Below are positions 1,902 to 36,098 of a DNA stretch of 64,000 nucleotides, in pieces; the first letter of the stretch is position 1; every line of letters begins with the position of its first letter. A program made the translations under genes and the position numbers. The notes beneath the pieces were generated by a model. The model saw only the letters and a program-made list of their open reading frames with translations, was not told the DNA's origin and searched no databases. The stretch spans positions 186,001 to 250,000 of the IMG/VR virus record IMGVR_UViG_3300034072_001021; one strand, given 5' to 3'.

Positions 1902-2195
1902 ATGGCGCAGGTAATCATTGCAACCGTACGTGTCGACAACCTTGACGATCACTATGATCTCTATGCTTACCTGCGTGACTCATGTATCCCGGATGTCAGA
2001 CCGTTGTTCAACTGCCTGGCTGACCATTACGATGACAAACTCAAAGCGGCCGCTCTTATCAAACGCGCTGATGGGCTGCATGAGTTGGTGATCTGGTCTG
2101 GTTACGCGGAAGTGCGATTTAAGGCAAGTGTTCCTCGTAATCCACCAACGGTTGAAGAATTCACGACTCATCTTTTAAAGGAAAGCGCATTATGA
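1902..2195 (+). CDS. hypothetical protein
   Basis: 97 aa, aagga RBS, stop overlaps the next start (ATGA). Confidence 0.7.
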   Translation: MAQVIIATVRVDNLDDHYDLYAYLRDSCIPDVRPLFNCLADHYDDKLKAAALIKRADGLHELVIWSGYAEVRFKASVPRNPPTVEEFTTHLLKESAL

Positions 2196-2401
2196 GTGCT
2201 GACGTGTTTGAATGTGAAAAGTGCGGTAACGTTGACTCTATCCACACCACCCAAACCACATCGGCTGGTTATCTGTGTCATCGTTGCCTTACTGGAGAAT
2301 GGCATGGTCAGTTCAGTGAGGAACGATATTCGTTTGAGAAACACGGCCCGGCCTTGAATAAGGTCAATCCTGAAGATGGTTTCAACACCAGCTTCAGTTA
2401 A
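2192..2401 (+). CDS. small Zn-ribbon protein
   Basis: CEKC...CHRC Cys pairs; translationally coupled; followed by a terminator hairpin. Confidence 0.7.
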   Translation: MSADVFECEKCGNVDSIHTTQTTSAGYLCHRCLTGEWHGQFSEERYSFEKHGPALNKVNPEDGFNTSFS

Positions 2402-2403
2402 AC

Positions 2404-2437
2404 GCATAGAGAGCAGGGGCTTGATCCCCTGCTCTCT
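2404..2437 (+). terminator. GCATAG-family hairpin
   Basis: 12-bp stem agagagcagggg/cccctgctctct preceded by GCAT, with a T-tract shortly downstream. Confidence 0.7.
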
Positions 2438-2493
2438 GACCTTATTTTTTAAGGTAAATAAATCCCCGATCGACCTATCGTGTAGGGGGATCT

Positions 2494-2835
2494 ATGAATA
2501 TCAAATTTAAGGGCCCTACGGGCTTGATTTTCGACGTTTCTTCTATAAACCAGATGCTGGATGAGGAGGGAGTCTTTTCGCCCCTTGCAACGCAGTATGT
2601 GGTCGAGAGAGACCTAGTCGAAAAACTAGGACTCACAGTAATCAGCGACATCCCACAGTATCCATCGCTGCGTGAACAGTACAGTAATGTACGAAAGCTC
2701 ATGGCCCATCATGGATTAGAGTTTCATACACGCCTTCCGGAGTATATTGTCGGAATGTTGCGGATGTTCATCATCTCTGTGGTGATGGACAAGGAAGTAC
2801 TCATTATCTGCCTGCAGAAACAATTAAGGAGCTAA
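2494..2835 (+). CDS. hypothetical protein, small-ORF array member 1
   Basis: 113 aa, gggga RBS; ends in the beta-turn-beta segment FIISVVMDKEVLIICL. Confidence 0.7.
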   Translation: MNIKFKGPTGLIFDVSSINQMLDEEGVFSPLATQYVVERDLVEKLGLTVISDIPQYPSLREQYSNVRKLMAHHGLEFHTRLPEYIVGMLRMFIISVVMDKEVLIICLQKQLRS

Positions 2836-2838
2836 CCA

Positions 2839-3438
2839 GTGCGGTTCATCAGTTTGCCTATTTCGGATTTGGTCAGCTATATCACCGACAACATCGATGA
2901 GTGGCCAGCCGGGTACAACCTAGAGCCTGGACAGGAAGCCCAGACAATCATCGATGCGGCAGCAGCATTTGCTACCCACTACATCTTCTCCGGACTGCCA
3001 CATGTGGCGGAAAAGAAAGATCCATTGGAGACCATGCTTGAGGTGCTTGGTTATCCAATCCACTTGATCAGTTACGAGCAAGTTGAAGATATCTGCGACG
3101 AGATCGACGAATACTTCCTTGCCATGACCGCCATTATGGATGTAATGGTCGATGGTATTGGTGAGTATCTCAAGAACAAAGAGATTACCGTTTCTCACAA
3201 GTCAGGATGTGAAGACATCGTTATCAACATTGATGACGACATCCGCCTGATCCAACTGCGCAAGCTGAATGGCCAGTTGAAAGAAATGATGCCGCCGAAG
3301 AAGATCACTGCCAAGAACATTGATGATGCTGAACTGGCAGTCGGTCGTTTCGTTCGTAAAGCGTTTGATGCAGCGTCATCTGAAGCGGTGCGTGTAGAAC
3401 TCAAGCGCATCTTCGACGAAGAGATCAAGCGCCATTGA
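2839..3438 (+). CDS. hypothetical protein, array member 2
   Basis: 199 aa, GTG start after an aggag RBS. Confidence 0.75.
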   Translation: MRFISLPISDLVSYITDNIDEWPAGYNLEPGQEAQTIIDAAAAFATHYIFSGLPHVAEKKDPLETMLEVLGYPIHLISYEQVEDICDEIDEYFLAMTAIMDVMVDGIGEYLKNKEITVSHKSGCEDIVINIDDDIRLIQLRKLNGQLKEMMPPKKITAKNIDDAELAVGRFVRKAFDAASSEAVRVELKRIFDEEIKRH

Positions 3439-3453
3439 TAAAGGAGAGGCGAT

Positions 3454-3885
3454 ATGATTCCTGTATTGGTGTCGTCGTCTTCCCTTGAAGCAGTTGTCAC
3501 TGACATCTTCAATGACCAGTTAGGCAGTTGCTTCCCATCTGACGTATCGAGTCTGATAAGTCGTCTGTGTGTCAGTTATAATGAGACACAGGAAGATCTG
3601 TTGATTGATGCTGCCATTAAAGGCATGGAACGGGAGTTGTCCGACTACTCCCCAATCGACATGGTCGTTGAGTTCTTCATCAGGCTCGTGGACGGTTACG
3701 TCAATAAGGAGACACACCTCCCCGTACTCCAGTACGAGGCTACCCGAGAAACAATCGTGATTACTTCACGGTTGAAACCTAAACCAGCAGTGATCGATTC
3801 ATTGATCAAAGAGTACCGACATGCTGAATCCAGAGGTGATTACCTACCGGAGCGGTATCGTCGAGCATTCGAAGGATTGTTATAG
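3454..3885 (+). CDS. hypothetical protein, array member 3
   Basis: 143 aa, ggagagg RBS. Confidence 0.75.
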   Translation: MIPVLVSSSSLEAVVTDIFNDQLGSCFPSDVSSLISRLCVSYNETQEDLLIDAAIKGMERELSDYSPIDMVVEFFIRLVDGYVNKETHLPVLQYEATRETIVITSRLKPKPAVIDSLIKEYRHAESRGDYLPERYRRAFEGLL

Positions 3886-4309
3886 GTCCTGGGGTGTACC
3901 GTATGTGGTCACCCGTGTGACTGTTAATAACGGGCCAGGGATGGTCAGGTTTGTCATGGTTGGTCTTCCGATCGACCATCGTGAGTTGCTGAAGATACAG
4001 GACGAGCTGTACGCTTTAGGGCTCGATGTCCCGTTGTTGGACATCATAAACTGTGGTCTAATGATGCACGACATCCTGGATACCGCGATAGTGCGCAGAT
4101 GGATGCGCAACAAGAACCCCACCAAACAACGACTGTTCTTACCGGATCTTGAAAAGACGTCCGACGTGATAAGCAGTCTTTTCTCTGGTCTCATGGCATC
4201 ATTCAAATTAAATTGCAAAGCCATAGACTATGATAATGGAGAGTTACTGTTGGAGATCTCTCGCGATGTCAAATGGGATGAACTCAATCGTTTTGAACCT
4301 AAACGATGA
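3821..4309 (+). CDS. hypothetical protein, array member 4 (true start probably near 3890)
   Basis: ORF tiles between neighbours; start is uncertain. Confidence 0.65.
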   Translation: MLNPEVITYRSGIVEHSKDCYRSWGVPYVVTRVTVNNGPGMVRFVMVGLPIDHRELLKIQDELYALGLDVPLLDIINCGLMMHDILDTAIVRRWMRNKNPTKQRLFLPDLEKTSDVISSLFSGLMASFKLNCKAIDYDNGELLLEISRDVKWDELNRFEPKR

Positions 4310-4718
4310 GAAGGCGCTAGGCGAGCCGGGACGAAAGTTACTCGAGCTTGTCAGCGCCCAGGTTTTAGTCTATGCCGCAATCGCATTATTCGTGTTTGAA
4401 GAGAGTTACTATGCGGACGACTTACTGGCAAATTATCCAGAACAACACATTACCTTTATAGAGTGGCTGGAGCACTTCGGTGACGCCGCCTCTAAAGAAA
4501 TTCAAGACTTAAGGACTTTCTATGAAATACCCAATGATGCGTCCGATGCGAGTCCCGGCAGAAATGCTACGCCGTATCAACTCATTCGAGTCGGATATTC
4601 GGGCTCAGATGAATACCTCTTTGTCCGAGCGTCCAAGTGTGAAAGTCATCATCACCTTGGAAACAAATGGCGAGTTCTTAACGAAAGCGATGCGGGCATG
4701 TCAGGCCACAGGTCTTAG
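4278..4718 (+). CDS. hypothetical protein, array member 5
   Basis: Within ORF 4230..4718; probable start MNSIVLNLND. Confidence 0.6.
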   Translation: MNSIVLNLNDEKALGEPGRKLLELVSAQVLVYAAIALFVFEESYYADDLLANYPEQHITFIEWLEHFGDAASKEIQDLRTFYEIPNDASDASPGRNATPYQLIRVGYSGSDEYLFVRASKCESHHHLGNKWRVLNESDAGMSGHRS

Positions 4719-5061
4719 TCTCGACCAGCTGTTTGAGGTCTTGTCTGAGAACTTCATGGCGCGCCTCAATGACACGTTCCCACTAGCCCCCATGATGGAT
4801 TCCAAGATGCCATCTCAGGCTCAACTGGAAATCCAAGACAGTATCAGTTCGATTCTCGACGAACTGGAGCGTCAGGCCCAGTTCATTAACCGTAACAACA
4901 CCGAGAGTCTCAAGATTCTGGAGATTGACAATGATGATGAATGGGCACTCATCGAACTCAAACCCCGCAATGAACCTGACGCTCCCGCTGACGCTGGTGT
5001 TACAGTTAGACTCCCGGCACGTCGAAAGAACCGACAGGCTCCTGCTAATTCCAGCAATTGA
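4639..5061 (+). CDS. hypothetical protein, array member 6
   Basis: Within ORF 4522..5061; probable GTG start MKVIITLET. Confidence 0.6.
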   Translation: MKVIITLETNGEFLTKAMRACQATGLSLDQLFEVLSENFMARLNDTFPLAPMMDSKMPSQAQLEIQDSISSILDELERQAQFINRNNTESLKILEIDNDDEWALIELKPRNEPDAPADAGVTVRLPARRKNRQAPANSSN

Positions 5062-5434
5062 AGCTGCTCTGCGCGGTCTACTGACATCGTCTATCTCGGT
5101 TCAGTTTGCCGGCCTTGTCACCTTCTGGCGAGACCTGATCAAAGAGAACATGACTTGCAATGCCATCGACTTGTCGTGGGATAGAACGCTACTAACCGTG
5201 GAGGAGGCTTTCGAACCTCTTCTCGAATCTTTAAATGTCTATGTGGAATCTCTGCGCGAATACGGTAAGATCGATAACCTTATCGTGGACGTTCTCGGAT
5301 TAAATGCAATAGACGGTAGCGTCATAGTGAGGATAAGTGATGGCCGAGACAACAGCCATAATCCACGGCGCCGGGATCTACAAGAATTTCCTAAGCGACC
5401 TGTCACAGGTCATGGATCATTCGTACGATATTGA
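4925..5434 (+). CDS. hypothetical protein, array member 7 (start uncertain)
   Basis: ORF tiles the gap and ends in VDVLGLNAIDGSVIVRIS plus a tail. Confidence 0.55.
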   Translation: MTMMMNGHSSNSNPAMNLTLPLTLVLQLDSRHVERTDRLLLIPAIEAALRGLLTSSISVQFAGLVTFWRDLIKENMTCNAIDLSWDRTLLTVEEAFEPLLESLNVYVESLREYGKIDNLIVDVLGLNAIDGSVIVRISDGRDNSHNPRRRDLQEFPKRPVTGHGSFVRY

Positions 5435-5687
5435 CGAGATATTCGTCCATTATCGCGACTGGGTCCGTCGTGGTGAATTGTTTGTCGACGAGTTTGTGAT
5501 GCCGATGTTCCCTCCCAGCTACAACGGTAAGGAACTCGTCGAGAGTGAAGATTTCATAGCGTTGAGAAATGCTATGATAAACCTGTACTGCGCGCTAGAC
5601 CACGCCACCCCAGGCATGGACAGACGCAGAGTTTGCCATGCGGCCTATTCGGAAGACGACGAGGCAGTAGTCATCGTTTTGCGTTAA
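5337..5687 (+). CDS. hypothetical protein, array member 8
   Basis: 116 aa, ending VCHAAYSEDDEAVVIVLR. Confidence 0.65.
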   Translation: MMAETTAIIHGAGIYKNFLSDLSQVMDHSYDIDEIFVHYRDWVRRGELFVDEFVMPMFPPSYNGKELVESEDFIALRNAMINLYCALDHATPGMDRRRVCHAAYSEDDEAVVIVLR

Positions 5688-5695
5688 GGGAAATC

Positions 5696-5998
5696 ATGCG
5701 AATCATTAGTACTTCTGCGGCAATTGCTGAATTGTTGCCCGAGGTATTTTACGCACTGGACCCCGATGCCCCTCTGGACACTGAGGAGCTTCCAAGGTCG
5801 CTGCGGCGATACATCAATAATCTCATCATGGCCGCGTTCTTCTACCGTAGTGTCGACGACATTATCGATAGTGACTGGCTAACCAAGATCAGGCGAGATC
5901 CGTCTTTCCTAATGGTCTCCAGATTCCGATGGGTGGAATTGGATGTTATCGATACCGAGGGTACATATATCTTAATCATCGAGGAGAACCAACGATGA
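5696..5998 (+). CDS. hypothetical protein, array member 9
   Basis: ATG after an aaggg RBS; stop overlaps the next ATG. Confidence 0.7.
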   Translation: MRIISTSAAIAELLPEVFYALDPDAPLDTEELPRSLRRYINNLIMAAFFYRSVDDIIDSDWLTKIRRDPSFLMVSRFRWVELDVIDTEGTYILIIEENQR

Positions 5999-6408
5999 GC
6001 ATCACCGAGTATATCGGGTCTGTCGTCAATTTCGACACGGCAGCCCCAGGGATTCTGGGTACGAACCGACGTAACGTCCAAGTGCTCGCTGTACTGGACA
6101 TGGACACTGCGGCTATGATGTCCGATGTCCGTGCCCGGCATTCCCAAGTCAAGAACTACATTCAGGATCTCCCTGAAGCGGCCAGTTCCTACAACTACGT
6201 GAAGATCCGTTATATGAACGGTGACATCGAAGTTCTCGGTGTACCGTGGATCAAACACGATACCATTGAGGTGGTCACTAGCCGCAAGCTGGTAATCACC
6301 GTGAACAATGTCACCGATACCGTCGAGAACACAGTCAAGCAGGCACTTCTCCAAAATGGCATCGACTTTTCTATTGAACAAATCGGGACGGTTTCGCAGC
6401 CGACCTAA
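5995..6408 (+). CDS. conserved phiKZ-like hypothetical protein upstream of DNA polymerase
   Basis: gaggag RBS, 137 aa, beta-rich; position matches the conserved gene I recall before the polymerase in this family. Confidence 0.75.
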   Translation: MSITEYIGSVVNFDTAAPGILGTNRRNVQVLAVLDMDTAAMMSDVRARHSQVKNYIQDLPEAASSYNYVKIRYMNGDIEVLGVPWIKHDTIEVVTSRKLVITVNNVTDTVENTVKQALLQNGIDFSIEQIGTVSQPT

Positions 6409-6847
6409 AAGCCAGGTGGTGTTCGGAGCAAACGCCGAGAACACCCTCATCTATCCATTTGATCATCACTTCTTCATGAGGTACGGTGACTTCGTAGAAA
6501 AGGTCGGCAACATCGAAGGGATTGTGTATTCTGGAGATGAATGCACTGGCGGCATGATCGACATTCTCACTCCATACACCATCGTCGACATCATGCTCAA
6601 TGAAGAAAAAGAAGACATGAGTCTGACGACGTCTATTCAAGATACCTTGTATGACGAGTATGAGTACGATCTTGTCAATAAGGTTCTTGACGAGCTGTAT
6701 CGTTTCTACATGACCTCGGGCAAACCCCATGGTTTTTACGAGATCTTGAACATGGCTTCGATGAATGATCGATTCATTTATCTGAGCGACTTTTTCGGTG
6801 TCCGTGAAGAAGATTCGATGATCTACGTCTTGACCGAAAGTGAATAA
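6308..6847 (+). CDS. hypothetical acidic protein, array member 10 (start probably 6416 or 6476)
   Basis: Open frame, acidic, same C-terminal beta-hairpin pattern. Confidence 0.6.
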   Translation: MSPIPSRTQSSRHFSKMASTFLLNKSGRFRSRPKSQVVFGANAENTLIYPFDHHFFMRYGDFVEKVGNIEGIVYSGDECTGGMIDILTPYTIVDIMLNEEKEDMSLTTSIQDTLYDEYEYDLVNKVLDELYRFYMTSGKPHGFYEILNMASMNDRFIYLSDFFGVREEDSMIYVLTESE

Positions 6848-6914
6848 AAACTAAGGGTGACTCTATTATGAGTCACCCTACTTTATTTTTTCTTTTGTAC
6901 AGGACACAGCATCG

Positions 6915-9200
6915 ATGGAGAACCCATTCGTACTTCCCAAGGAAGCTTACACGCGTGATCTCGACCTGCTGAAAGGCTATTTCAAGCAGAATGTGTTCTT
7001 CCTCCACCGGATGACCGGTCAGTCGGAAGACCAGTGTCTTAAGTTCCTCAGAAAGACCCTGTCTCGTAACGGTCGTTTCCCGATGCAAGACCCGAATATG
7101 CTGGTTCTTCGTCAAGACAGTCCGGGCAATCGCGTAAAAGACGAAATGACGCTGCTCAGCTACGTCAAAACCGTTACCGACAGTGACCGTATTCTCTCTC
7201 CGTCCATGGTTTGCTACGAAAACCCGAATGTCCTGAAGTCTCCTTCGGCAAAGTTCGTGGAATCGGGCATCGCTGGCCGTAAGAAAGCCAAGAACGAGAT
7301 GTTCATGGCCCAGGTAGCCGAAGATAAGGTCCTGGAAAAGATCAAAGACGCCGAGCAGAACGCCAAGAAGATTGCGATTAACTCGCTGTCGGGTATGCAT
7401 GGCTTCACTGGCAACATTCTGTACGTAAAATCGGGTCACTCGAGCCTGACTTCCATGTGCCGTTCGGCTACCGGATACGGTAACGCCAACAACGAGAAGC
7501 TTTTGGCAGGTTCTCGTCATTATCACTCGCCCAAAATCACAGTCGCCAACATGGCGGCGCTGGTTACCAGCCAACCTCACGCCGAATTCGAAGCCGCCAT
7601 GCAAAAATGTGGCTTTGTCTACCCGAATGTTGAGCAAACTGCTGAATGTATCCGTCGCAGCACTGACCTTTACTGGCGCAACCCAGCTCAATTCCAGAAG
7701 ATCGTGGACTTCATTGTCCGCATGACTCCGTTGGAACGTGCCATCGTGGTCTACACGGGCGACCTTTATCACATCACCAAGTACAATGATGAGTTTGTCC
7801 GTACGTTCATGGACAAGATCATCAAGTTCGATCCGTCTAAAGACGATACCGTGATCGAAGACCCGAAGAAACTGCTCGACGGTAAGTCAATTGACGACGA
7901 TACCAAGGTTCTGGCTACTTACCTCAATGCCGATCTGGCTCGTGGTGAGAACTTCGACTCAATGGCCAAGAAAGGAATGAACGAGGCACTGCTTTATATT
8001 GCCCGTACAGCCCTAAACATCCAGAACGTCCTGCAGGAATACTTCGATTTCATCCGTGTCTTCCTGACCCCTGTGCTGTTGGCTCCTACTGTGGCTAACA
8101 TTAAAGGCATTCTGCGTCGCGTGGTGCTGGCGTCAGACACAGACTCCACCATTTTCACTACTCAGGAGTGGGTGACTTGGTATACCGGCAACGATAATCG
8201 CACCAAAGAAGGCGATGGTATCTGGTACACCACCACTTACATTGCCTGTCAGTGCATCGTACACGTCCTGGCCAAGCTGTCGGCTAACATGGGCGTTATC
8301 AAGGAAGACCTTCATCGTCTCACCATGAAGAACGAGTATGCATTCCCGGTCTTTACCCTGACCAGTCGTGCAAAACACTACTACGCATTCATGAGCTGCC
8401 GTGAAGGTAACGTCTATAAGGACTACGAGATGGAGATCAAGGGCGTGGCCCTGCGCTCCTCTACCGTGCCTGTGTCGATTATCAAGGCTGCCAAGGGATT
8501 CATGAAGGAAGTCATGAACCGGGCTGACCAGAACCAACAGTTCACCCTGGAAGAACTGTACCACAAGGTCTGGTCGTACGAGCAGGATATCTACAACTCC
8601 ATCAAGAACGGGGAACATAAGTACCTGAAGTCTGCACAGATTCAGGAATCTTACCCGAACATGAACAAGGAGAATCCTTACCTGGAGAAATCCAACTACA
8701 AACACTACCTCATGTGGGAAGAAGTGTTTGCGCCGAAGTACGGTCATGTTGAGAACCCACCCTACACCTGCATTAAGGTGCCGCTGGCTATCAAGAACAA
8801 GACCGACATGGCTGGTTGGTTCGCCAAGGTTGAGGAAACCGATCCCGAGTTCGCTGCTCGACTGAAGCACTACCACACGATGACCGGTCGGGACAAGATT
8901 GGTACACTGTACCTACCCTACTCGATTCTTGCTGGTATCGGCATGCCCGAAGAAGTCATGGTCATGATTGACGTACGTCGTCTGACCTACGAGATCCTGG
9001 AGTCGTTCTACATGATTCTGGAATCACTGGGCGTGTTCCAGGTCGATAGCAAGTACGTGCGTCTGATCAGCGACATCTATACTCCTGAAGGTGAAGTTAA
9101 TCTGCAGCCCTTGGCGACAGACTCCAACAGCACGATCGACGATGATGAAGAAGAGGACTTCCTTTACGAAGAGGAAGAAGACGACGAAATCTACTGGTAA
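6915..9200 (+). CDS. DNA polymerase family B, polymerase-domain half (phiKZ gp50-like)
   Basis: PolB motifs KxxxNSxxG (KKIAINSLSGMHG), YGNANNE and SDTDS; no exonuclease motifs; acidic C-terminal tail. Confidence 0.92.
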   Translation: MENPFVLPKEAYTRDLDLLKGYFKQNVFFLHRMTGQSEDQCLKFLRKTLSRNGRFPMQDPNMLVLRQDSPGNRVKDEMTLLSYVKTVTDSDRILSPSMVCYENPNVLKSPSAKFVESGIAGRKKAKNEMFMAQVAEDKVLEKIKDAEQNAKKIAINSLSGMHGFTGNILYVKSGHSSLTSMCRSATGYGNANNEKLLAGSRHYHSPKITVANMAALVTSQPHAEFEAAMQKCGFVYPNVEQTAECIRRSTDLYWRNPAQFQKIVDFIVRMTPLERAIVVYTGDLYHITKYNDEFVRTFMDKIIKFDPSKDDTVIEDPKKLLDGKSIDDDTKVLATYLNADLARGENFDSMAKKGMNEALLYIARTALNIQNVLQEYFDFIRVFLTPVLLAPTVANIKGILRRVVLASDTDSTIFTTQEWVTWYTGNDNRTKEGDGIWYTTTYIACQCIVHVLAKLSANMGVIKEDLHRLTMKNEYAFPVFTLTSRAKHYYAFMSCREGNVYKDYEMEIKGVALRSSTVPVSIIKAAKGFMKEVMNRADQNQQFTLEELYHKVWSYEQDIYNSIKNGEHKYLKSAQIQESYPNMNKENPYLEKSNYKHYLMWEEVFAPKYGHVENPPYTCIKVPLAIKNKTDMAGWFAKVEETDPEFAARLKHYHTMTGRDKIGTLYLPYSILAGIGMPEEVMVMIDVRRLTYEILESFYMILESLGVFQVDSKYVRLISDIYTPEGEVNLQPLATDSNSTIDDDEEEDFLYEEEEDDEIYW

Positions 9201-11382: not shown

Positions 11383-13278
11383 ATGTCCGTCAACGATCCG
11401 CACAACGGTCAAGAATCCGTGAACACTGGCGCCGAGCAGCGTCAAGACCGTGCAGCCCCTCAGCAGCAACAGCGTCAGGCCCCGGTGGTTAACTCCATCC
11501 TCGACCTGAACCGTCTCCTGGGTGGCGGCATGTCCCGTCGCACCAGCGGTGAACAACTGATCGCCGCCATCGCCGCCTGCAAGTTCTGGTTCTCCGCTGA
11601 CCGTCAACTGGCCGCCGCCGGTGGCATCGATCTGACCAAGATCCAGGTGATCGGCCTGGAAGCTTCCGAGCACAACGTCGAGGTCTCCTCGGTCATCCTG
11701 GCCTACCCGGTCGAGTCCCAGGGCACCCTGCGTGTTCTGACTCACTTCCTGGCCCTGGAATCCAGCCTGGCTGAAGAGAACCAGGTCCGTACCGTCAACC
11801 TGAACCATCGCGACTACCCGCTGCCGGTAGTGGTCTCCGACTACATGACCGAGTCCTACATGGCTCTGGTCGATGAGATCGTGAAGAAGCACTTCGAGCA
11901 GTCCCGTCGCAACGTCGAAGTACAGCGTGCCGGCTGGCGCACCGTCTCCCGCAAGGTCAACTTCTCCGAGCCGGAAAGCACCGAAGCCCGCAACGTCGTG
12001 TTCTACGCCCAGGCGGCCATCGTGGCCATGTACAACCACGTCTACGAGCGTGACCTGTACTTCAGCCTCGAGTGGCTGAGCAAGAACTCCACCCTCGAGA
12101 TCTCGGTCGACATGTCCGGCCGTGAGGCCCACAGCGCCGATGGCCTGCCGCGCCGCCGCGACATCGCGGTGAACGTAGCCGGTAAGGTGGCCAAGGGCGA
12201 CCAGACTGCTTCGGTTGGCCTGGCCAGCCTGGGTGGTTACGTCAGCCTGATGTACTCGCCGCCCCAGGACGAAGACCGCTGGAATCGCAACGTCCGTCGC
12301 GATACCCCGTACTTCACTCCGACCCTGATCATCAACGCCATCGACACCGGCACCAACAGCATCACTGCTGAGCAGCTGCTGCTCGGTCTGGCCGGCGCTT
12401 CGGTGATCAGCTCCAACCAGGCGTGGGCTCAGACCTTCCTGCCGGGCGAAGTTGCCCGCGGTGAGATCGACTACCGTGACACCGGCCTCCTGGGCCTGCT
12501 CGGTCCGGACAAGACCGCTTTCGAGATCGAAGCACGTACCAACCTCGACACCGACAAGTGGGGTCAGTACTTCTTCTCCCTCGTGAACGAGAACCTGGCC
12601 TGGGCTATCGAACTCGAGGAGGGTGGTGACAACTCCTGGATCATGGGTCTGCTGCTCGACGCTGCTTCCGACACCAGCCCGAACCGTGACGCCGTACGTC
12701 GTCTGTACGACTTCGCCGATCGTCTGACCAACAACAACTTCTCCCGTCGCGCTGCCGAACTGGACGTCACCGTCCCGCTGCAGCTGTCCGGTGCCCGTTA
12801 CCTGACCGGTACCTGGATCGACGAGCGTGGTGAAGAGCGTGACCTGCGCGAGTGGGATCTGCTCCGTTGGATGGCCCAGAACCCGACCGACGAAGGCACC
12901 TCGGCCCTGAACTACCAGGACGTCATCGACCGCGTCGACCTAGACGTGGAAGTGCGCGTATCCGAGCAGTTCACCCAGCTGACCAGTGCTCTGGGCGCGT
13001 CGAACGTGAAGTTCAGCCGCTACGTCGACCTGGCGTACATCAATCCGAAGTTCATCCAGGCCCTGGCCGCTGCTGTGGCAGACTGCAAGATCAACATCGA
13101 TCAGCGCAGCGCTCACTACAGCTTCGGCGCTCGTCGTCTGCGTGGCAACACTCGCATCCGCGATTTCGTGGGTGGCGACCTGACCAACGGCATGCTGTCC
13201 AGCCGTCGGATCGGTGGCAACGAGCGTTCCCTGCGTGGTCACGTGGGCAACGGCTTCGGCCATGGTTCGTCCTTCTAA
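11383..13278 (+). CDS. chmA: chimallin / PhuN nuclear shell protein
   Basis: 631 aa with a Q-rich disordered N-terminus. GTWIDERGEERDLREWD and YINPKFIQAL resemble chimallin segments. It lies directly upstream of the nvRNAP beta' subunit and has extreme codon bias. Confidence 0.9.
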   Translation: MSVNDPHNGQESVNTGAEQRQDRAAPQQQQRQAPVVNSILDLNRLLGGGMSRRTSGEQLIAAIAACKFWFSADRQLAAAGGIDLTKIQVIGLEASEHNVEVSSVILAYPVESQGTLRVLTHFLALESSLAEENQVRTVNLNHRDYPLPVVVSDYMTESYMALVDEIVKKHFEQSRRNVEVQRAGWRTVSRKVNFSEPESTEARNVVFYAQAAIVAMYNHVYERDLYFSLEWLSKNSTLEISVDMSGREAHSADGLPRRRDIAVNVAGKVAKGDQTASVGLASLGGYVSLMYSPPQDEDRWNRNVRRDTPYFTPTLIINAIDTGTNSITAEQLLLGLAGASVISSNQAWAQTFLPGEVARGEIDYRDTGLLGLLGPDKTAFEIEARTNLDTDKWGQYFFSLVNENLAWAIELEEGGDNSWIMGLLLDAASDTSPNRDAVRRLYDFADRLTNNNFSRRAAELDVTVPLQLSGARYLTGTWIDERGEERDLREWDLLRWMAQNPTDEGTSALNYQDVIDRVDLDVEVRVSEQFTQLTSALGASNVKFSRYVDLAYINPKFIQALAAAVADCKINIDQRSAHYSFGARRLRGNTRIRDFVGGDLTNGMLSSRRIGGNERSLRGHVGNGFGHGSSF

Positions 13279-20235: not shown

Positions 20236-21813
20236 GTGATGCAGATTCAAATGAGGATGCCGGTCGAAGGGCCGCACGGGAAGATCGATATCTCCCACGG
20301 CGAAGAGACCCTTTCCTTGCTGATCGGCAGCTACCATTCGGCAGCTATCACAGACAAAGAGAACCTGTTCAAGGAGGTAAATGAATTCATCAACCGCATG
20401 CTCAGTGACGAAGAGCAGGCAGTGCTTTGGGGTATCTACTCCGACGTGCGCGAATACCTGGGTACCGATGGCATCGTAGGCTCCTACTTCGTTCGAGAGG
20501 AAATCGAGAAGCTGGTGCGGAAGATGTACTCCATCGTGACTTATGACCGTCTGCGCAGTTACGTGGATCGGGCTAACTTCAAGATCCCTGGCGATGTCAG
20601 TGAGGTCTTCAAGGAGTACAACGATCGTGGTCGTGTGAACTACCGCAATCAGACCTACATCCGTGCTGACTACATGGATCTGCAGGCGCTGGCGTTGGGT
20701 CTGCGCTTGATGGTGCCGATCTGGGGCGTATTCATCCAGAACGTCTCTGGCGATCATGGCAATGGGTTTAAGGAATCCGAAGCCGTCAAGATGATCGAGA
20801 TCGCCGGTGTGGTCAATTGGCCTCCGTACAAACGCATGCTCGACTACGTTGAAGCGTGTGTGGGCAAGGATACGTCAGCAATCTCCATGACCACCGTCAT
20901 GGCTGGTCTGTCCAGTGAAGAAGTGCCGCGTCACCTGATGGCCATGGCGCTGGTGCGCAAGATCGCTGTAGGTACGATCTCCACTGGTAGCGAATCCGAG
21001 TCCATGGCTCGTAACCTGTTCAACTACGTCAATGGTACGCTCCAGCGTATGGACGGCCGCTTCCAGAGTGTCACGGGTATCGTGATGCCGAAGAAGAGTC
21101 GTGCAGTCGATAAGTCTGATGAGGATAACTCGTCTGTATGGGATGACTACTCGCAGACCACCGACATCACTGAAGGTTCTCGTCAGCTGATCGAAGTGTT
21201 CTCCGAGAAGGTTGAAACGATCATCATGCGTTCCAACGAGCCGGTCGACATCTCTCGTGTCCAACAGTGCATTGCCATCTGTTCGCGCCACGAGTCCCGT
21301 CCGATCCTGCCGTTCCAGAAAGCGTTGATCTTCTGGGTCATTCGCAGTATCTCTCCTGATGCCCGTGATCTGCTGACCAAGCAGACCATGCTACGCCTGA
21401 TGGGTATTGCTCAGGCGATCCTGGCCCACTGTGGATATTACGAACTTGCCATTCTGATCTCCGCAGAAGAGCACATCAACGAAGAAGGCGTCTCGTTCAT
21501 GCCGACCGAGACTCGTAACAAGATCACCAAACAACAGGCGGAAATCCTCGACCAACAGTATCCTTACTACCGTCAAGAAACGAAGCGCCAAGATCCAGGC
21601 AAGCGGAGCAACGTGGCAGTCACTGCGATCGACATGATCGTAGCTGAGATGTCGGGCATCGCCTGGAAACCTCATGCGCCGCGCGACATCGTGGAGAAGA
21701 TCCCGATGCTGACGCAATCTGGTTACATGTATATCTCCGGCGACATCAAACGTCAGCTGGCCGATATGATAATCCGTATCAACAATACACTCAGGGGGCA
21801 ACATGGAGCTTAA
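20236..21813 (+). CDS. non-virion RNAP promoter-specificity subunit (phiKZ gp68-like)
   Basis: 525-aa helical protein; synteny between the ChmC-like and PicA-like genes. Confidence 0.78.
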   Translation: MMQIQMRMPVEGPHGKIDISHGEETLSLLIGSYHSAAITDKENLFKEVNEFINRMLSDEEQAVLWGIYSDVREYLGTDGIVGSYFVREEIEKLVRKMYSIVTYDRLRSYVDRANFKIPGDVSEVFKEYNDRGRVNYRNQTYIRADYMDLQALALGLRLMVPIWGVFIQNVSGDHGNGFKESEAVKMIEIAGVVNWPPYKRMLDYVEACVGKDTSAISMTTVMAGLSSEEVPRHLMAMALVRKIAVGTISTGSESESMARNLFNYVNGTLQRMDGRFQSVTGIVMPKKSRAVDKSDEDNSSVWDDYSQTTDITEGSRQLIEVFSEKVETIIMRSNEPVDISRVQQCIAICSRHESRPILPFQKALIFWVIRSISPDARDLLTKQTMLRLMGIAQAILAHCGYYELAILISAEEHINEEGVSFMPTETRNKITKQQAEILDQQYPYYRQETKRQDPGKRSNVAVTAIDMIVAEMSGIAWKPHAPRDIVEKIPMLTQSGYMYISGDIKRQLADMIIRINNTLRGQHGA

Positions 21814-23290
21814 CAAGATTCAGTTTCGCGAACGGCCGGGTTATCGCGAGCTGCATCTGCGGCCGTTCAATTCCAACGCAACGCGTGAAGATGTCGAGAT
21901 CCTGAACGAAGTCACCCATGGTGGCGAGCGTCTGGAACCCTCGATCCTCTCTGGCGTGTCCGGGCGTATCATCAAGCCTTCCGCTACCACTTGCGGGGCT
22001 GTGAACATCGCCAACGGTTGGAGTGAACGTCGTCTGATGTTCGCAATGGAAGTCGTCCTCCGTCAAACGCGTACCGCAGTACAGCTGCTGGAGATCAGCG
22101 GCCACACCGATCACGTTGGCGCAGTTGACCGCGGTACTCGTGACGTGGCCCTCGACCGCGACATGCGCCTGTACTTCAACTCGATCACGGAGATCCGTCA
22201 CAACTACATCGAGACGCCTCGTGCCGCAGGCTGGTCGAGTTCGGTTGGTCAGTGCGTACACGTCATCAGTCCTCACGTCCGTCCCGACTTCAGTGTCGAT
22301 CGTTCGACTCAGGGCACAATGACCATGCGTCCGGAAGACATCTTCCATTCAGATCCGCGTGATGTCCTGCAGAAGAGCTTCGAGCGTCATGTTCAGCGTG
22401 AAGGTAACTTCATGGACATGCGTCACAGTGTCGGTAGCCAAGGCCTCGTCCTGTCCGACCGTCGTAACGACACCACCACGCACTTCCTGCATCGTTCTCT
22501 GCGTGCGCTGAACACCGCACACCAGACCGGTGTAGAGCGTCAAGGTATCGAGTTCGACAACTCGGCCGTACTGCGTGATGCACGTGGTCAACTGCGTGAG
22601 CGTACGTTCGTAGGCTTTGCACCGTTGGCGGATCTGGCCCGTGACAGCAACATCATGAGCCAGGGTTTCGTTACGCTGGGTGAACTGATGGACATGAACC
22701 CGGACTTCGACTGGAATGGCGTTGAGGTGGCGTTCCTGCCGCCTGAGCTGCGTCATGACTACAGCGGTAGCACCAGTGACTGGCGTGGTCGTGACCATAC
22801 CACCATTGCTGCGTCCCACATCGCTCGTGCGCTGCCAACGTACATGAACTACCACCAGATCGGTCTGTATCGTTCGCAGATCAACAACATGGGCTTTGGC
22901 GGCGAAGTGTCATTCTTGACCGACTCGTGCCGTGCTCTGAACATCCACGATGAGATCGATCGGTCTCGCCTGGATGCGTTTGAGCAGCGTCTGCGTACTG
23001 AATTGTTCGAAGAGATGCTGCCGTGGGAAGGCTGCATGTTCGACATGAGCATCAGTGCCGAGCTGGGTCGTGACGTGTTCATCTCGTTGTCTCTGGACGG
23101 CGAACCGATGGCTGAGTTCGCATTCCCGCTCTTTGCAGACTCCATGGTTGCTCCGGTAGTAGTTACCGACCATAGCCTGATCACCTCGATGGGTTCCACC
23201 ATCAGCGGTATCGTGGATATGTTCGGCGATCGACTCGCTCGTGACAATCCCCTTCAACTGCCGCGAGGCAACACCCAGTACAAGTTCTAA
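21803..23290 (+). CDS. picA: PicA/Imp1-like nuclear import factor (gp69-like)
   Basis: 495 aa directly after the gp68-like gene; N-terminal LHLRPF and NGWSERRLMF resemble the family as recalled. Confidence 0.72.
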   Translation: MELNKIQFRERPGYRELHLRPFNSNATREDVEILNEVTHGGERLEPSILSGVSGRIIKPSATTCGAVNIANGWSERRLMFAMEVVLRQTRTAVQLLEISGHTDHVGAVDRGTRDVALDRDMRLYFNSITEIRHNYIETPRAAGWSSSVGQCVHVISPHVRPDFSVDRSTQGTMTMRPEDIFHSDPRDVLQKSFERHVQREGNFMDMRHSVGSQGLVLSDRRNDTTTHFLHRSLRALNTAHQTGVERQGIEFDNSAVLRDARGQLRERTFVGFAPLADLARDSNIMSQGFVTLGELMDMNPDFDWNGVEVAFLPPELRHDYSGSTSDWRGRDHTTIAASHIARALPTYMNYHQIGLYRSQINNMGFGGEVSFLTDSCRALNIHDEIDRSRLDAFEQRLRTELFEEMLPWEGCMFDMSISAELGRDVFISLSLDGEPMAEFAFPLFADSMVAPVVVTDHSLITSMGSTISGIVDMFGDRLARDNPLQLPRGNTQYKF

Positions 23291-33217: not shown

Positions 33218-36088
33218 TTATAATCCGTAATATGCCAGCACATTTTGACGGGACTTCTCGTTAGGGATGTCCTTCAGCACGTCTTCCCACTTGATCAGAC
33301 GCTTCACAGCCAGGTCACGCTTTTCCGGATCAGCAGTCGACATCAGCACCGAGGTCAGGTTGTTGAAGTTACGCAGGCCTTTGGTACCGATGGCCATCTG
33401 ACCAACACCGGTGTAGATCTTCTTGGCCGAGCAGATATCTTTGCTGTGCTCGTGGAAGAAGTTCAGCAGCTCAGTCCAGCCTTGGACGAAGTCTTCGCCA
33501 TCCAGACGCAGGACACGACTGATGCAGCGATCCAGCAGGGTCTGGTACGGCGCTGCTTTCACAGCGTTGTCACCAGCTTCATCACGACCTTTGGCGTAGC
33601 TCTTCAGGTCTTCGCTCACGAACTTGACAGTCATCGTCATTGACTCCTCATGAATGTCACTGATACGCTTCTTAATGGAAGCAGCGTCCAGTTGGGTTGA
33701 AATACTGAACAGACGAGCAGCACGACTTGCAAGTGCAGCTTCATCTGTGTTGATGCCTGGAAGGATCTGACCACGGGCCCAAGCTTTGATCTCGCGCTTA
33801 GTCCAGTGTTCTACCTTACGATGGTCACGGTTCCGATCGCGGACGTAGATGCCCGACGGTGTGGATGGAACCCGAATACCGTTGAGAACATAAGATCTGG
33901 CATCTTCACGGTACCAGAAGACCGGTACTTTGAATCTGACGTAGATCTCTTCCCAGAGGTCTTCTTCAGGCGCCTTCTCAGTAGCTGAGATTTGCTTTCG
34001 CAACCATGCCTTCAGTTCAGCGTCACGCCATTCGATTGGCAGCTTATTTGGACGAGTGGGATCATTGATGAACACACCGTCTTCGAGCGCCAATGGACGT
34101 ACGTTGGATTTCAGATAATCAACAACCTCATCGACAGACCAGTGCACAGCACTTGTGTTGAACTGCACGCTAATCAAACGCTTTGCACGTTCGATGCACT
34201 CTGGATCACGCACCGAGAAATCAGCATGGACTTCGTCATTGGCCAAAGCCTTGATTTCGTCCCACGACCATGACAGAGGACTGTCCAACTTACGCAACCG
34301 ATCTTCAACCAGAACACCGTTGGTGGTCTTGAGAGGGTTCACCGAGTTGCGGTAGAAGTTGTAGATGTGATCGTCAGTCCAGTGCGGATCGATCCTGAAC
34401 TTAGAACGGATAGCCAGAAGAACATCTGCTTCAGAGAAGTTAGATGCTTTCACATCACCTTTCAGATACCCGATCAACTCCTCCTCACTTGCGTAATTCG
34501 GATTTGTGATTTCAGGCAGTTCTTCAGCAGGCGTCTCACCATTTGCAATGTAAGCAATCGCTTGCTCATCATTGTAACGGTCTGGCACTCGGAACTTGAT
34601 CCGAGCAGAAAGCAGCACCAGGCTCTTGGGTTTGCTGGTGTTGGCCTTACCTTGAGCCCAGGCCTTCAATGTCTCTGTAGACCAGTCTGCCGGATGTTCC
34701 TTGTCACGGTTCCGATCATTGAGCAGTACGCCGCTGTTAAAGCCCTCTGGGAGCTTCCCTGTAGCGAAGTAAGCATGAAGGTCAACGTCTGTCCAGTTAT
34801 CGACAGCTGTCGTACAACGCGCTCGTAGAGCGGCCATGAGCGTGGCATGTGTGACATTCATCCCCATGGGGATCAGACCCCACACCCAGCCGATCAGCTC
34901 AGACGCAGTCCATTCGGAGGCAGTCAGGAACTTACGCCGTTCGACATTGTCGATGACTTCCTTACCGATAGCGTGACAGAGTGCATTTACCAGTTCTTTA
35001 TCTTCGGTAACGACCACGGAAACTTGAGAAGGTTCTTCGTGAACTTCCTCATTGACCACAATGGGTTCTTCCGACGTGCCCTCACTGACGACATCATCAA
35101 CTGGGAGATCGTCTGCCGATGCAACTTCTTCGACAACGACGGGTTCTTCGTCATGGTCTTCTTGGACGACCTCTGCTTCATCCTCGGTTGGATTACTTTC
35201 GGTAACCTCATCGATGACTTCCTCTTCTACCGGATAACGGGCAGCAAGTACAGCAGACGCTTCAGTATCACCACTTTCAATCAGACTGTTCAGTTGATCG
35301 TCCGAGTAAGAAGCGTAATCATGAGTGAAGCTCGGGACTTCTCCAGTGGACACCCAATGACGAAGCTCGTCGATACCCCAGAACCATTCACCACCAAAGT
35401 GACTGATCGCTGTCTTCAACAACTCGGGGTTATCGGACTCGATCTCACCGAGTACCCAAGCGTGCAGCTCAGGATCACTCCACTTGTCCGCCTCTTTATC
35501 GAGACGATTACGATCATTGACCAACACACCTGTGCTAGTCATTGCCGGATAAACAGATTTCTGGATGTACTGGCAGTAATCTTCGAACGTGATGCCCATC
35601 GGCAACTCGAAACGGTTACATGCCTCATCAATGGCGTACATCTGGTATTTCTCAGGGGTTCCGAAGAACCCCATGCCCAGATCAATCAACTCACTGTCAT
35701 TCCAGTGAGTGGCATCTTTGACCCAGCGATCTGGATCGTTGACGTAGTTGCCGTTGATGGTCTTCTCAGGGACCTTCTCGAAGAGCAGCCAGTTGTCGAG
35801 GTCTTCTTCACCCCAACTTACAGCATCTTTATCTTCGAGCACGGCCTTGGAACGCACTGCTACGTAGAACTCAGTGGTGCCGGTAGTGTAGTTGGTGAAC
35901 AGTTCGCCAGACGCTAGGGCGTACAGTTCAGCCAGACTCCACTCGTTGAGAGGTTTGGCCTCACGCTCAACGTCGCCCACCCAGAGACCGTTACTGGTCT
36001 TGGCTGGTTCTCTCCCGAACTGCTCGTACAAAGAGACTTCTCTCTTCGACCAAGCAGCAGGATAGCGGCCGTCGTATTTGTCGGACAT
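33218..36088 (-). CDS. 956-aa repeat protein (gp79-like position) with a tandem ~80-aa Trp-rich module
   Basis: Seven copies of G-x4-D-x2-R-x7-W-x3-E(L/I)-x-AW, an acidic linker and a helical C-terminal domain. Confidence 0.85.
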   Translation of the reverse strand: MSDKYDGRYPAAWSKREVSLYEQFGREPAKTSNGLWVGDVEREAKPLNEWSLAELYALASGELFTNYTTGTTEFYVAVRSKAVLEDKDAVSWGEEDLDNWLLFEKVPEKTINGNYVNDPDRWVKDATHWNDSELIDLGMGFFGTPEKYQMYAIDEACNRFELPMGITFEDYCQYIQKSVYPAMTSTGVLVNDRNRLDKEADKWSDPELHAWVLGEIESDNPELLKTAISHFGGEWFWGIDELRHWVSTGEVPSFTHDYASYSDDQLNSLIESGDTEASAVLAARYPVEEEVIDEVTESNPTEDEAEVVQEDHDEEPVVVEEVASADDLPVDDVVSEGTSEEPIVVNEEVHEEPSQVSVVVTEDKELVNALCHAIGKEVIDNVERRKFLTASEWTASELIGWVWGLIPMGMNVTHATLMAALRARCTTAVDNWTDVDLHAYFATGKLPEGFNSGVLLNDRNRDKEHPADWSTETLKAWAQGKANTSKPKSLVLLSARIKFRVPDRYNDEQAIAYIANGETPAEELPEITNPNYASEEELIGYLKGDVKASNFSEADVLLAIRSKFRIDPHWTDDHIYNFYRNSVNPLKTTNGVLVEDRLRKLDSPLSWSWDEIKALANDEVHADFSVRDPECIERAKRLISVQFNTSAVHWSVDEVVDYLKSNVRPLALEDGVFINDPTRPNKLPIEWRDAELKAWLRKQISATEKAPEEDLWEEIYVRFKVPVFWYREDARSYVLNGIRVPSTPSGIYVRDRNRDHRKVEHWTKREIKAWARGQILPGINTDEAALASRAARLFSISTQLDAASIKKRISDIHEESMTMTVKFVSEDLKSYAKGRDEAGDNAVKAAPYQTLLDRCISRVLRLDGEDFVQGWTELLNFFHEHSKDICSAKKIYTGVGQMAIGTKGLRNFNNLTSVLMSTADPEKRDLAVKRLIKWEDVLKDIPNEKSRQNVLAYYGL

Positions 36089-36098
36089 GGAATGATCC

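What the first reader, a model, noticed from the sequence alone, without database searches (positions are those of the whole stretch)
2494..6847. Ten consecutive small ORFs with one shared architecture: cryptic paralog array between phuZ and DNA polymerase
Seen: ten co-oriented, overlapping 100-200 aa acidic ORFs. Several open with a short hydrophobic strand (MRFISLP, MIPVLVS, MNSIVLN, MKVIITL, MRIIST). All have a helical middle and a strand-acidic turn-strand segment at or near the C-terminus (VVMDKEVLIIC, SHKSGCEDIVINI, QYEATRETIVIT, IDYDNGELLLEI, GYSGSDEYLFVR, EIDNDDEWALIE, LNAIDGSVIVRI, AYSEDDEAVVIV, VIDTEGTYILII, GVREEDSMIYVL). Known: in phiKZ this interval holds gp47/gp48, reported as the import-specificity factors Imp2/Imp5. 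Inference: a diverged tandem family of adaptors, possibly a cargo-selection panel for the phage nucleus.
Basis: partly seen in the sequence, partly recalled or inferred. Interest (0 to 1): 0.65.

Follow-up and report, generated by a model that had tools for sequence, protein, structure and literature searches.

The report
Conserved small-protein gene array in nucleus-forming phage
Between the tubulin and DNA-polymerase genes of this nucleus-forming jumbo phage lies one operon of eleven genes, ten of which probably share one phage-specific protein shape and sit where phage phiKZ has two known nuclear-import helper genes, so they are candidate cargo selectors, though that role is untested here.

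Summary
The ORFs are real genes, but there are eleven, not ten. The skipped one (5995-6408) is the SH3DP partner of the phage DNA polymerase (Pfam E 3e-28), the phiKZ gp49 family. Terminator-like hairpins at 2407-2438 and 6854-6879 bracket the block. Each ORF has exactly one syntenic ortholog in about 20 related phage genomes.

Sequence and profile comparisons give no significant link between different positions. The only exception is an indirect chain joining o02 and o03 through the two halves of phiKZ gp43.

In BFVD they match many small chimallivirus proteins, several per genome. Those I could place lie in the same array of Noxifer, PhiEaH1, 201phi2-1 and RAY-like phages. PDB and ESM Atlas give nothing.

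By position, o04-o09 correspond to phiKZ gp44-gp48, so o08 matches Imp2 and o09 matches Imp4 (not Imp5). An ancient, fast-diverging structural paralog array is plausible. The import-adaptor role rests only on position and fold.

The parts
2407..2438 (+). terminator-like hairpin (13-bp stem followed by a T run) that closes the upstream unit; the array starts after it
   Evidence: sequence read
2494..2835 (+). o01, 113 aa, GGGGG ribosome-binding site; ortholog family also found at the same position in a clade whose DNA polymerase is 41-44% identical
   Evidence: HH link to family F022, 77% rising to 100% on iteration
2839..3438 (+). o02, 199 aa, GTG start after AGGAG; net charge -16; weak profile match to the gp43 family (N-terminal module)
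   Evidence: HH 18-52% over about 137 columns
3454..3885 (+). o03, 143 aa; hairpin plus a conserved C-terminal 'GDY.PER.RR' tail that matches the C-terminal module of phiKZ gp43
   Evidence: o03+F029 profile against long gp43, 83% probability, P 9e-6
3821..4309 (+). o04, 162 aa from a conserved ATG inside o03 (alternative starts GTG 3905, ATG 3941); takes the position of phiKZ gp44
4266..4718 (+). o05, 150 aa; conserved to about 4640, the tail is off-frame o06; takes the position of gp44.1
   Evidence: HH link to F018, 79% rising to 99.6%
4522..5061 (+). o06, 179 aa from a conserved ATG with an AAGGA site; protein conservation begins at GTG 4639; takes the position of gp45
   Evidence: the o08 model matches a 181-aa DT01 protein taken (by length only) to be the DT01 ortholog of o06, TM 0.51, probability 0.95
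4931..5434 (+). o07; conserved part about 4982-5344, ending '...RISDG'; the last 29 codons are a lineage-specific read-through; takes the position of gp46
5340..5687 (+). o08, 115 aa, folded: strand, five helices, hairpin; second gene upstream of the SH3DP gene, which is the position of phiKZ gp47 (Imp2)
5696..5998 (+). o09, 100 aa, folded: strand, four helices, hairpin; directly upstream of the SH3DP gene, which is the position of phiKZ gp48 (Imp4)
   Evidence: PHROG 3235 E 8e-31; PF20287 E 3e-28; hhalign 100% to the gp49 family; PMC12571901
6356..6847 (+). o11, about 143-163 aa (ATG 6356, or GTG 6416/6419); clade-specific extra gene between the SH3DP gene and the polymerase gene; net charge -15
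6854..6879 (+). terminator-like hairpin (10-bp stem followed by a T run) that ends the array, just before the polymerase gene at 6915

Best explanation
The interval is this phage's copy of the gene block that all chimalliviruses keep between PhuZ and the C-terminal subunit of their split DNA polymerase (phiKZ gp43 to gp49).

Anatomy (shown):
- It looks like one transcription unit, bracketed by two hairpin terminators.
- Its eleven genes are closely packed, with start sites inside or touching the preceding gene.
- One gene (o10) is the SH3DP polymerase partner.

Fold (partly shown):
- The other ten encode small, mostly acidic proteins that appear to follow one plan: a short N-terminal strand, a helical core, and a C-terminal hairpin.
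- This is shown by models for o08 and o09 and inferred from conserved sequence patterns for the rest.
- The fold matches nothing in PDB or ESM Atlas, but matches many small chimallivirus proteins.

Evolution (inferred):
- Each position is its own fast-evolving ortholog lineage.
- o02 and o03 correspond to the two halves of phiKZ gp43.
- o04-o09 fill the six slots of gp44, 44.1, 45, 46, 47 (Imp2) and 48 (Imp4).
- The likeliest origin is ancient tandem duplication, followed by divergence beyond sequence recognition.

Function (inferred, not shown): the proteins act as cargo-specific escorts that present particular proteins to PicA/Imp1 (homolog at 21803-23290) for import into the phage nucleus, as genetics shows for Imp2 and Imp4 in phiKZ.

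My confidence by step: about 0.85 for the block homology, about 0.6 for a shared fold or paralogy, about 0.3 for the adaptor function.
For: Context:
- PhuZ, polymerase and chimallin flank the block.
- phiKZ, Noxifer, Desertfox, PhiEaH1 and 201phi2-1 have the same layout.
- In these genomes, as in the 75 related loci, the o10/gp49 gene lies just upstream of the polymerase gene; tblastn finds homologs in 171 phage records.

Orthology:
- Exactly one hit per locus for every ORF.
- Same-position HH links across clades: o01-F022, o03-F029, o05-F018, o08-F035/F042 at 99% or more after iteration.
- Six ORFs lie between the gp43-like gene and gp49 in the window, in phiKZ and in Noxifer.

gp43 link:
- o03 shares the C-terminal 'RGDYLP' motif with gp43.
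- The short gp43 family matches both halves of long gp43 (96% and 47%). F029 and o03 match the C-terminal half (74-83%). o02 matches the gp43 family at 52%.

Fold:
- Models with pLDDT 89 and 88 have the same order of elements.
- BFVD hits of probability 0.8-1.0 go to several array genes per phage. Every named hit of probability 0.5 or more is from a phiKZ-like jumbo phage.
- Hit lengths equal array gene lengths: Noxifer 3 of 3, PhiEaH1 4 of 4, 201phi2-1 2 of 2.
- The best o09 hits are the gene directly upstream of the gp49 homolog in three other genera.

Function: orf47 is Imp2 (Nlp1 import, and itself imported through Imp1) and orf48 is Imp4 (TopA import). Neither tolerates transposon insertions.
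Against: - No significant sequence or profile similarity exists between different array positions, apart from the indirect o02/o03 chain.
- No sequence link connects any window ORF to gp44-gp48. The best is o07-gp46 at about 6%.
- Only two of the ten proteins were folded. o09 against the o08 ortholog gives TM 0.38, probability 0.14.
- BFVD E-values outside the clade are mostly 1e-3 to 1e-1.
- BFVD hits were mapped to array genes by protein length, not by sequence.
- The motif's base rate is high.
- hhalign self-comparison of long gp43 found no internal repeat.
- The function of any position other than two phiKZ genes is unknown. The neighbouring gene product binds the polymerase rather than acting in import.
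Confidence: 0.55

Rival explanations
1. The ten proteins are unrelated small proteins that happen to share a simple strand-helices-hairpin layout. The block is only a conserved operon of distinct genes, with no common ancestry and no common function.
For: - All-against-all HMM and HH comparisons are negative.
- The motif occurs in 46% of other small proteins of the genome.
- The leave-one-out motif test fails for 7 of 10.
- Direct o08/o09 structural similarity is weak.
Against: - The o08 model matches, with probability 0.8-1.0, several different array genes in each of several phages, plus the DT01 o06 ortholog.
- PDB and ESM Atlas give nothing comparable.
- The short gp43 family matches both halves of long gp43.
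- Two rank-1 results out of ten in the leave-one-out test are unlikely by chance.
Confidence: 0.2
2. The array encodes accessory subunits or assembly factors of the nuclear replication machinery, working with the split DNA polymerase and its SH3DP partner. The Imp2 and Imp4 import phenotypes would then reflect piggy-back entry of complexes rather than dedicated adaptors.
For: - The block is fixed next to the polymerase gene and contains its SH3DP partner.
- Imp2 itself is nuclear.
- Chimalliviruses use unusual replisome parts (PMC13648687).
- Tight translational coupling suits subunits made in fixed ratios.
Against: - The polymerase complex described in PMC13648687 is made of gp82, gp50 and Rhc, and the passages searched do not mention array proteins.
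- Very fast sequence divergence is unusual for core replisome subunits. For example, gp48 finds only phages 95% identical or more.
- The Imp4 phenotype concerns the host protein TopA.
Confidence: 0.2
3. They are host-takeover or anti-defence proteins, the usual role of small acidic early phage proteins, and sit here by chance of genome organisation.
For: They are small, acidic and fast-evolving, and have no database family.
Against: - Position and gene count are kept across the whole virus family. Accessory anti-defence genes normally vary between relatives.
- imp2 and imp4 lack transposon insertions in phiKZ.
Confidence: 0.05

Closest known systems
phiKZ gp43-gp49 block (PHIKZ043-049), between PhuZ gp39 and DNA polymerase gp50
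   Same: - Same neighbours: PhuZ upstream; polymerase, the gp52-like minus-strand gene and chimallin downstream.
- Same orientation and the same tight packing.
- The gp49/SH3DP gene sits at the end.
- Six small genes lie between the gp43-like gene and gp49.
   Different: - gp43 is one 357-aa protein in phiKZ, but two genes here (o02, o03).
- This clade has an extra gene (o11) between the SH3DP gene and the polymerase gene.
- Apart from gp49 and weak gp43 links, no sequence similarity remains.
Imp2 (phiKZ gp47) and Imp4 (phiKZ gp48), cargo-specific nuclear import factors
   Same: - o08 and o09 hold the same two positions.
- The o08 model matches Noxifer gp041, a gp47-family member (probability 0.93).
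- The o09 model matches 201phi2-1 gp80, which holds the position of gp48 (probability 0.92).

   Different: - No detectable sequence homology.
- Sizes differ: 115 against 178 aa, and 100 against 127 aa.
- No functional data exist for this clade.
- The paper reports Imp2 and Imp4 as conserved only in Pseudomonas phiKZ-like phages.
SH3DP, Pfam PF20287 (SH3 fold domain associated with phage DNA polymerases)
   Same: o10 is a full-length member (E 3e-28).
   Different: This applies only to the eleventh ORF, not to the ten that the finding is about.

Membership tests
Chimallivirus gp43-gp49 syntenic block | Lies between PhuZ and the DNAP-C/chimallin genes, on the same strand | tested here: met
   PhuZ ends at 621, polymerase at 6915-9200, chimallin at 11383-13278. 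Same layout in phiKZ, Noxifer, Desertfox, PhiEaH1 and 201phi2-1.
Chimallivirus gp43-gp49 syntenic block | The gp49/SH3DP gene closes the array, next to the polymerase gene | tested here: met
   o10 matches the gp49 family at 100% (hhalign) and PF20287. One clade-specific gene (o11) is inserted before the polymerase gene.
Chimallivirus gp43-gp49 syntenic block | A gp43-like gene heads the run of small genes | tested here: inconclusive
   o02 against the gp43 family: 18-52%. o03+F029 against the C-terminal half of long gp43: 83%, P 9e-6. Shared 'RGDYLP' motif.
Imp2 (phiKZ gp47) family | Sequence or profile homology to gp47 | tested here: not met
   jackhmmer from gp47 reaches 15 loci but not this clade. 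HH probability for o08 against the gp47 family is below 1%.
Imp2 (phiKZ gp47) family | Second gene upstream of the gp49 homolog | tested here: met
   o08, o09, o10 in the window correspond to gp47, gp48, gp49 in phiKZ.
Imp2 (phiKZ gp47) family | Same fold as a gp47-family protein | tested here: inconclusive
   o08 against the Noxifer 167-aa protein (gp041, gp47 family): TM 0.52, probability 0.93, E 0.06. Identity of the hit was inferred from its length. Other array genes match about as well.
Imp2 (phiKZ gp47) family | Needed for import of a specific cargo, and itself imported through Imp1 | not testable with these tools
   Genetic and microscopy criterion. The complex prediction with the Imp1 homolog gave no verdict.
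Imp4 (phiKZ gp48) family | Sequence homology to gp48 | tested here: not met
   gp48 finds only phages 95% identical or more by tblastn, and nothing by jackhmmer in 80 loci.
Imp4 (phiKZ gp48) family | Gene directly upstream of the gp49 homolog, with a matching fold in other genera | tested here: met
   o09 holds that position. Its best BFVD hits are the genes in that position in RAY-like phages (100 aa, E 4e-4, TM 0.65), 201phi2-1 gp80 (probability 0.92) and PhiEaH1 gp026. phiKZ gp48 itself was not among the listed hits.
Single tandem paralog family | Significant sequence or profile similarity between different positions | tested here: not met
   Best of 55 pairs is 11%. Best cross-position value after iteration is 21%, o03 against o02. 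Only the two halves of gp43 are linked, through the short gp43 family.
Single tandem paralog family | Same fold in different positions | tested here: inconclusive
   Same order of elements in o08 and o09. o08 matches the DT01 o06 ortholog (probability 0.95) and several array genes per phage. o09 against the o08 ortholog reaches only TM 0.38. Eight members were not folded.
SH3DP (PF20287) | Passes the Pfam gathering score over the whole domain | tested here: met
   98.4 bits against a cut-off of 25, profile positions 3-121 of 122. Applies to o10 only.

The most novel reading that the evidence does not exclude
All six to nine small genes of this block, in every chimallivirus, descend from one ancestral gene and together form the cargo-selection panel for PicA/Imp1. 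Each paralog would license a different cargo, perhaps including replication proteins. Imp2/Imp4-type adaptors would then be a core, family-wide system that sequence searches have hidden, not a peculiarity of Pseudomonas phages.
Probability: 0.25. Interest if true: 0.8.

Novelty: new member of a known kind. Interest (0 to 1): 0.55.

Why it matters
How the phage nucleus chooses its cargo is an open question. PicA/Imp1 is the only broadly conserved specificity factor, and the adaptors Imp2 and Imp4 were reported as restricted to Pseudomonas phiKZ-like phages.

If the array is a family-wide set of structural paralogs that includes the Imp2 and Imp4 positions, it supplies a ready list of candidate adaptors in every chimallivirus. 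In phiKZ these are gp44, 44.1, 45, 46 and an unannotated gene upstream of gp43.

It would also explain why sequence searches missed them. And it makes the question testable gene by gene with the existing nuclease-fusion selections and knock-down tools.

Tried and rejected
- Megablast of the region against phage records: no match.
- Pfam and PHROG scans of the ten ORFs: nothing below E 0.01.
- hmmsearch, hhalign, hhsearch and iterated hhblits between array families: no significant cross-position hit.
- jackhmmer from phiKZ gp40-gp53 into 80 chimallivirus loci: only gp49 reaches the window.
- hhalign self-comparison of long gp43: no repeat reported.
- Regex for the hairpin motif: the base rate is too high to be useful.
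- Leave-one-out hairpin HMM: mixed result.
- Chou-Fasman prediction on the alignments: agreed with the AlphaFold2 secondary structure at only 0.49-0.53, so I discarded it.
- Structure searches: VIA-align on PDB representatives (both models), Foldseek on PDB (o09) and ESM Atlas (o08) gave no meaningful match.
- Complex prediction of o08 with the PicA/Imp1 homolog: no verdict, score 0.00. This is evidence neither for nor against binding.
- Literature: I found no localisation, interaction or essentiality data for gp43-gp46 homologs.
- The large protein searches were not run. No claim here rests on absence of relatives, and a single pass could not bridge what local profiles failed to bridge.
- Programmed frameshifting between overlapping ORFs was considered and dropped. 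Each overlap has one conserved frame and a conserved start codon for the next gene.


Full report
**What the window is.** The window is part of a complete 259-kb IMG/VR virus record with terminal repeats. It encodes PhuZ (ending at 621), a B-family DNA polymerase subunit (6915-9200) and chimallin (11383-13278). It is therefore a nucleus-forming chimallivirus. The nearest isolate is Pseudomonas phage pPa_SNUABM_DT01, with 71% chimallin identity. Megablast finds no close DNA relative among phage records.

**The observation.**
- Between 2494 and 6847 there are eleven + strand ORFs, not ten.
It is the phiKZ gp49 family (hhalign 100%).
- gp49 is described as a DNA-polymerase interactor whose antisense knock-down gave a strong plaque-formation defect (PMC12571901).
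- Strong terminator-like hairpins at 2407-2438 and 6854-6879 bracket the eleven genes exactly, so they look like one transcription unit.
- Ribosome-binding sites precede most starts. The proteins have pI 4.4-6.3.

**Are they genes?** Yes.
- Each ORF has exactly one counterpart, in the same order, in DT01 and in about 20 related IMG/VR genomes, at 26-55% identity with protein-like substitution patterns.
- The long overlaps are largely artefacts of longest-ORF calling. In every overlap only one frame is conserved.
- Three start codons (o04, o06, o11) are ATGs kept inside conserved codons of the preceding gene.
- In relatives, o07 ends with a TGA that overlaps the o08 start (ATGGCTGA). The window lineage has ATGGCCGA, which adds a 29-residue unconserved tail.

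**Sequence tests of paralogy.** These are negative.
- Family HMMs find no member of another family below E 0.09 in a small database.
- The best of 55 hhalign pairs is o03/o07 at 11% probability.
- I then collected 80 chimallivirus loci through the polymerase, clustered 1113 array ORFs into 73 families and ran hhsearch and iterated hhblits.
- Every strong link joins families at the same position in different clades: o01-F022, o03-F029, o05-F018, o08-F035/F042.
- Cross-position values stay at or below 21%.
- The hairpin motif alone is not distinctive.

**Relation to phiKZ.**
- All clades show the same layout: a gp43-like gene, about six small tightly packed genes, the gp49 homolog, then the polymerase gene.
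- phiKZ and Noxifer have six genes between gp43 and gp49. The window has six between o03 and o10.
- o03 shares with gp43 a C-terminal hairpin followed by an 'RGDYLP' motif.
- The short gp43-like family of intermediate clades matches the N-terminal half of long gp43 at 96% and the C-terminal half at 47%.
- F029 and o03 match the C-terminal half at 74-83%. o02 matches the gp43 family at 52%.
- So gp43 looks like a fusion of two related modules that are separate genes here (o02, o03). This is the only profile-level hint of paralogy. hhalign self-comparison did not confirm it.
- By position, o08 corresponds to gp47 and o09 to gp48.
- The source paper names orf47 Imp2 and orf48 Imp4. Imp5 is orf287. 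Neither gene tolerates transposon insertions.
- gp48 itself finds only phages 95% identical or more by tblastn, so lack of sequence similarity to it says little.

**Structure.**
o08: strand 4-9, five helices, strands 98-104 and 109-114. o09: strand 2-6, four helices, strands 79-84 and 90-95.
- Against BFVD, each model finds its DT01 ortholog and then dozens of small uncharacterised proteins. Every named hit with probability 0.5 or more comes from a phiKZ-like jumbo phage.
- Often there are several hits per genome, and the two hit lists overlap.
- o08 also matches a 181-aa DT01 protein that I take, from its length, to be the o06 ortholog (PA10_00138), with TM 0.51 and probability 0.95.
- Hit lengths equal the lengths of array genes:
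  - Noxifer: 365, 167 and 136 aa (gp036, gp041, gp038).
  - PhiEaH1: 104, 142, 132 and 127 aa (gp033, 028, 027, 026).
  - 201phi2-1: 153 and 128 aa (gp78, gp80).
  - RAY-like phages: 127, 193 and 100 aa.
- The best o09 hits are the gene directly upstream of the gp49 homolog in three other genera.
- Limits: E-values outside the clade are mostly marginal. Hits were mapped to genes by length. o09 against the o08 ortholog reaches only TM 0.38. Eight proteins remain unfolded.

**Function.**
- Nothing here tests function directly.
- The PicA/Imp1 homolog lies at 21803-23290 (28% identity to gp69, E 7e-41).
- A complex prediction of it with o08 gave no verdict.
- The adaptor idea therefore rests on position and fold only.
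- A role with the polymerase, whose SH3DP partner is in the same operon, is a serious rival. The polymerase paper (PMC13648687) describes gp82, gp50 and Rhc, and the passages I searched do not mention array proteins.

**Verdict.**
- A real, conserved, single-operon gene block, homologous by position to phiKZ gp43-gp49.
- The shared architecture is confirmed where it was tested.
- Ancient paralogy is plausible but not proven.
- The import-adaptor function is a reasonable hypothesis at about 0.3.
- I found no paper describing the block as a structural family.

Noticed in passing
gp49 is reported to interact with the DNA polymerase, and its antisense knock-down gave a strong plaque-formation defect.
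   Followed up: yes
L019 17900-18328 (phiKZ NC_004629 about 35899-36327): A 142-aa ORF between gp42 and gp43 has no CDS in the RefSeq record but is conserved in 12 phiKZ-like loci (family F020). It sits where o01 sits, and it also starts with a hydrophobic strand and ends with a hairpin-like segment.
   Followed up: partly
window 2839-3885; L019 18342-19415: phiKZ gp43 (357 aa) appears to be a fusion of two related modules. These are separate genes (o02, o03) in this clade, and about 180-aa genes in intermediate clades.
   Followed up: partly
window 5340-5347: Relatives have ATGGCTGA, where the o07 stop overlaps the o08 start. The window has ATGGCCGA, so o07 runs on for 29 unconserved codons over o08.
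   Followed up: yes
window 3821, 4522, 6356: The ATG starts of o04, o06 and o11 lie inside conserved codons of the preceding gene (His-Ala, Tyr-Glu, Asn-Gly) and are kept in all relatives. This suggests selection on the embedded start codons and translational coupling.
   Followed up: partly
L001 5222-5695 and 5908-6399 (DT01 MW735835): The DT01 annotation lacks the o05 and o07 orthologs (gaps between PA10_00137, 138 and 139). It also gives the o06 ortholog an unconserved N-terminal extension.
   Followed up: partly
window 4925-5061: In the o06/o07 overlap, the o06 tail keeps a basic 'P-R-R-R-K/R' stretch in most relatives, while the o07 frame keeps a hydrophobic 'LPLTLxL' strand. This may be a short stretch of true dual coding.
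   Followed up: no
window 2192-2401: A 69-aa ORF with two CxxC pairs (weak DUF7685 / treble-clef hits) ends the upstream unit, just before the 2407-2438 hairpin.
   Followed up: no
window 21803-23290: Homolog of PicA/Imp1 (phiKZ gp69): 28% identity, E 7e-41.
   Followed up: partly
window 6915-9200: By homology to phiKZ gp50, this 'DNA polymerase' is the C-terminal subunit of a split B-family polymerase (PMC13648687). The N-terminal subunit should be encoded elsewhere in the genome.
   Followed up: no
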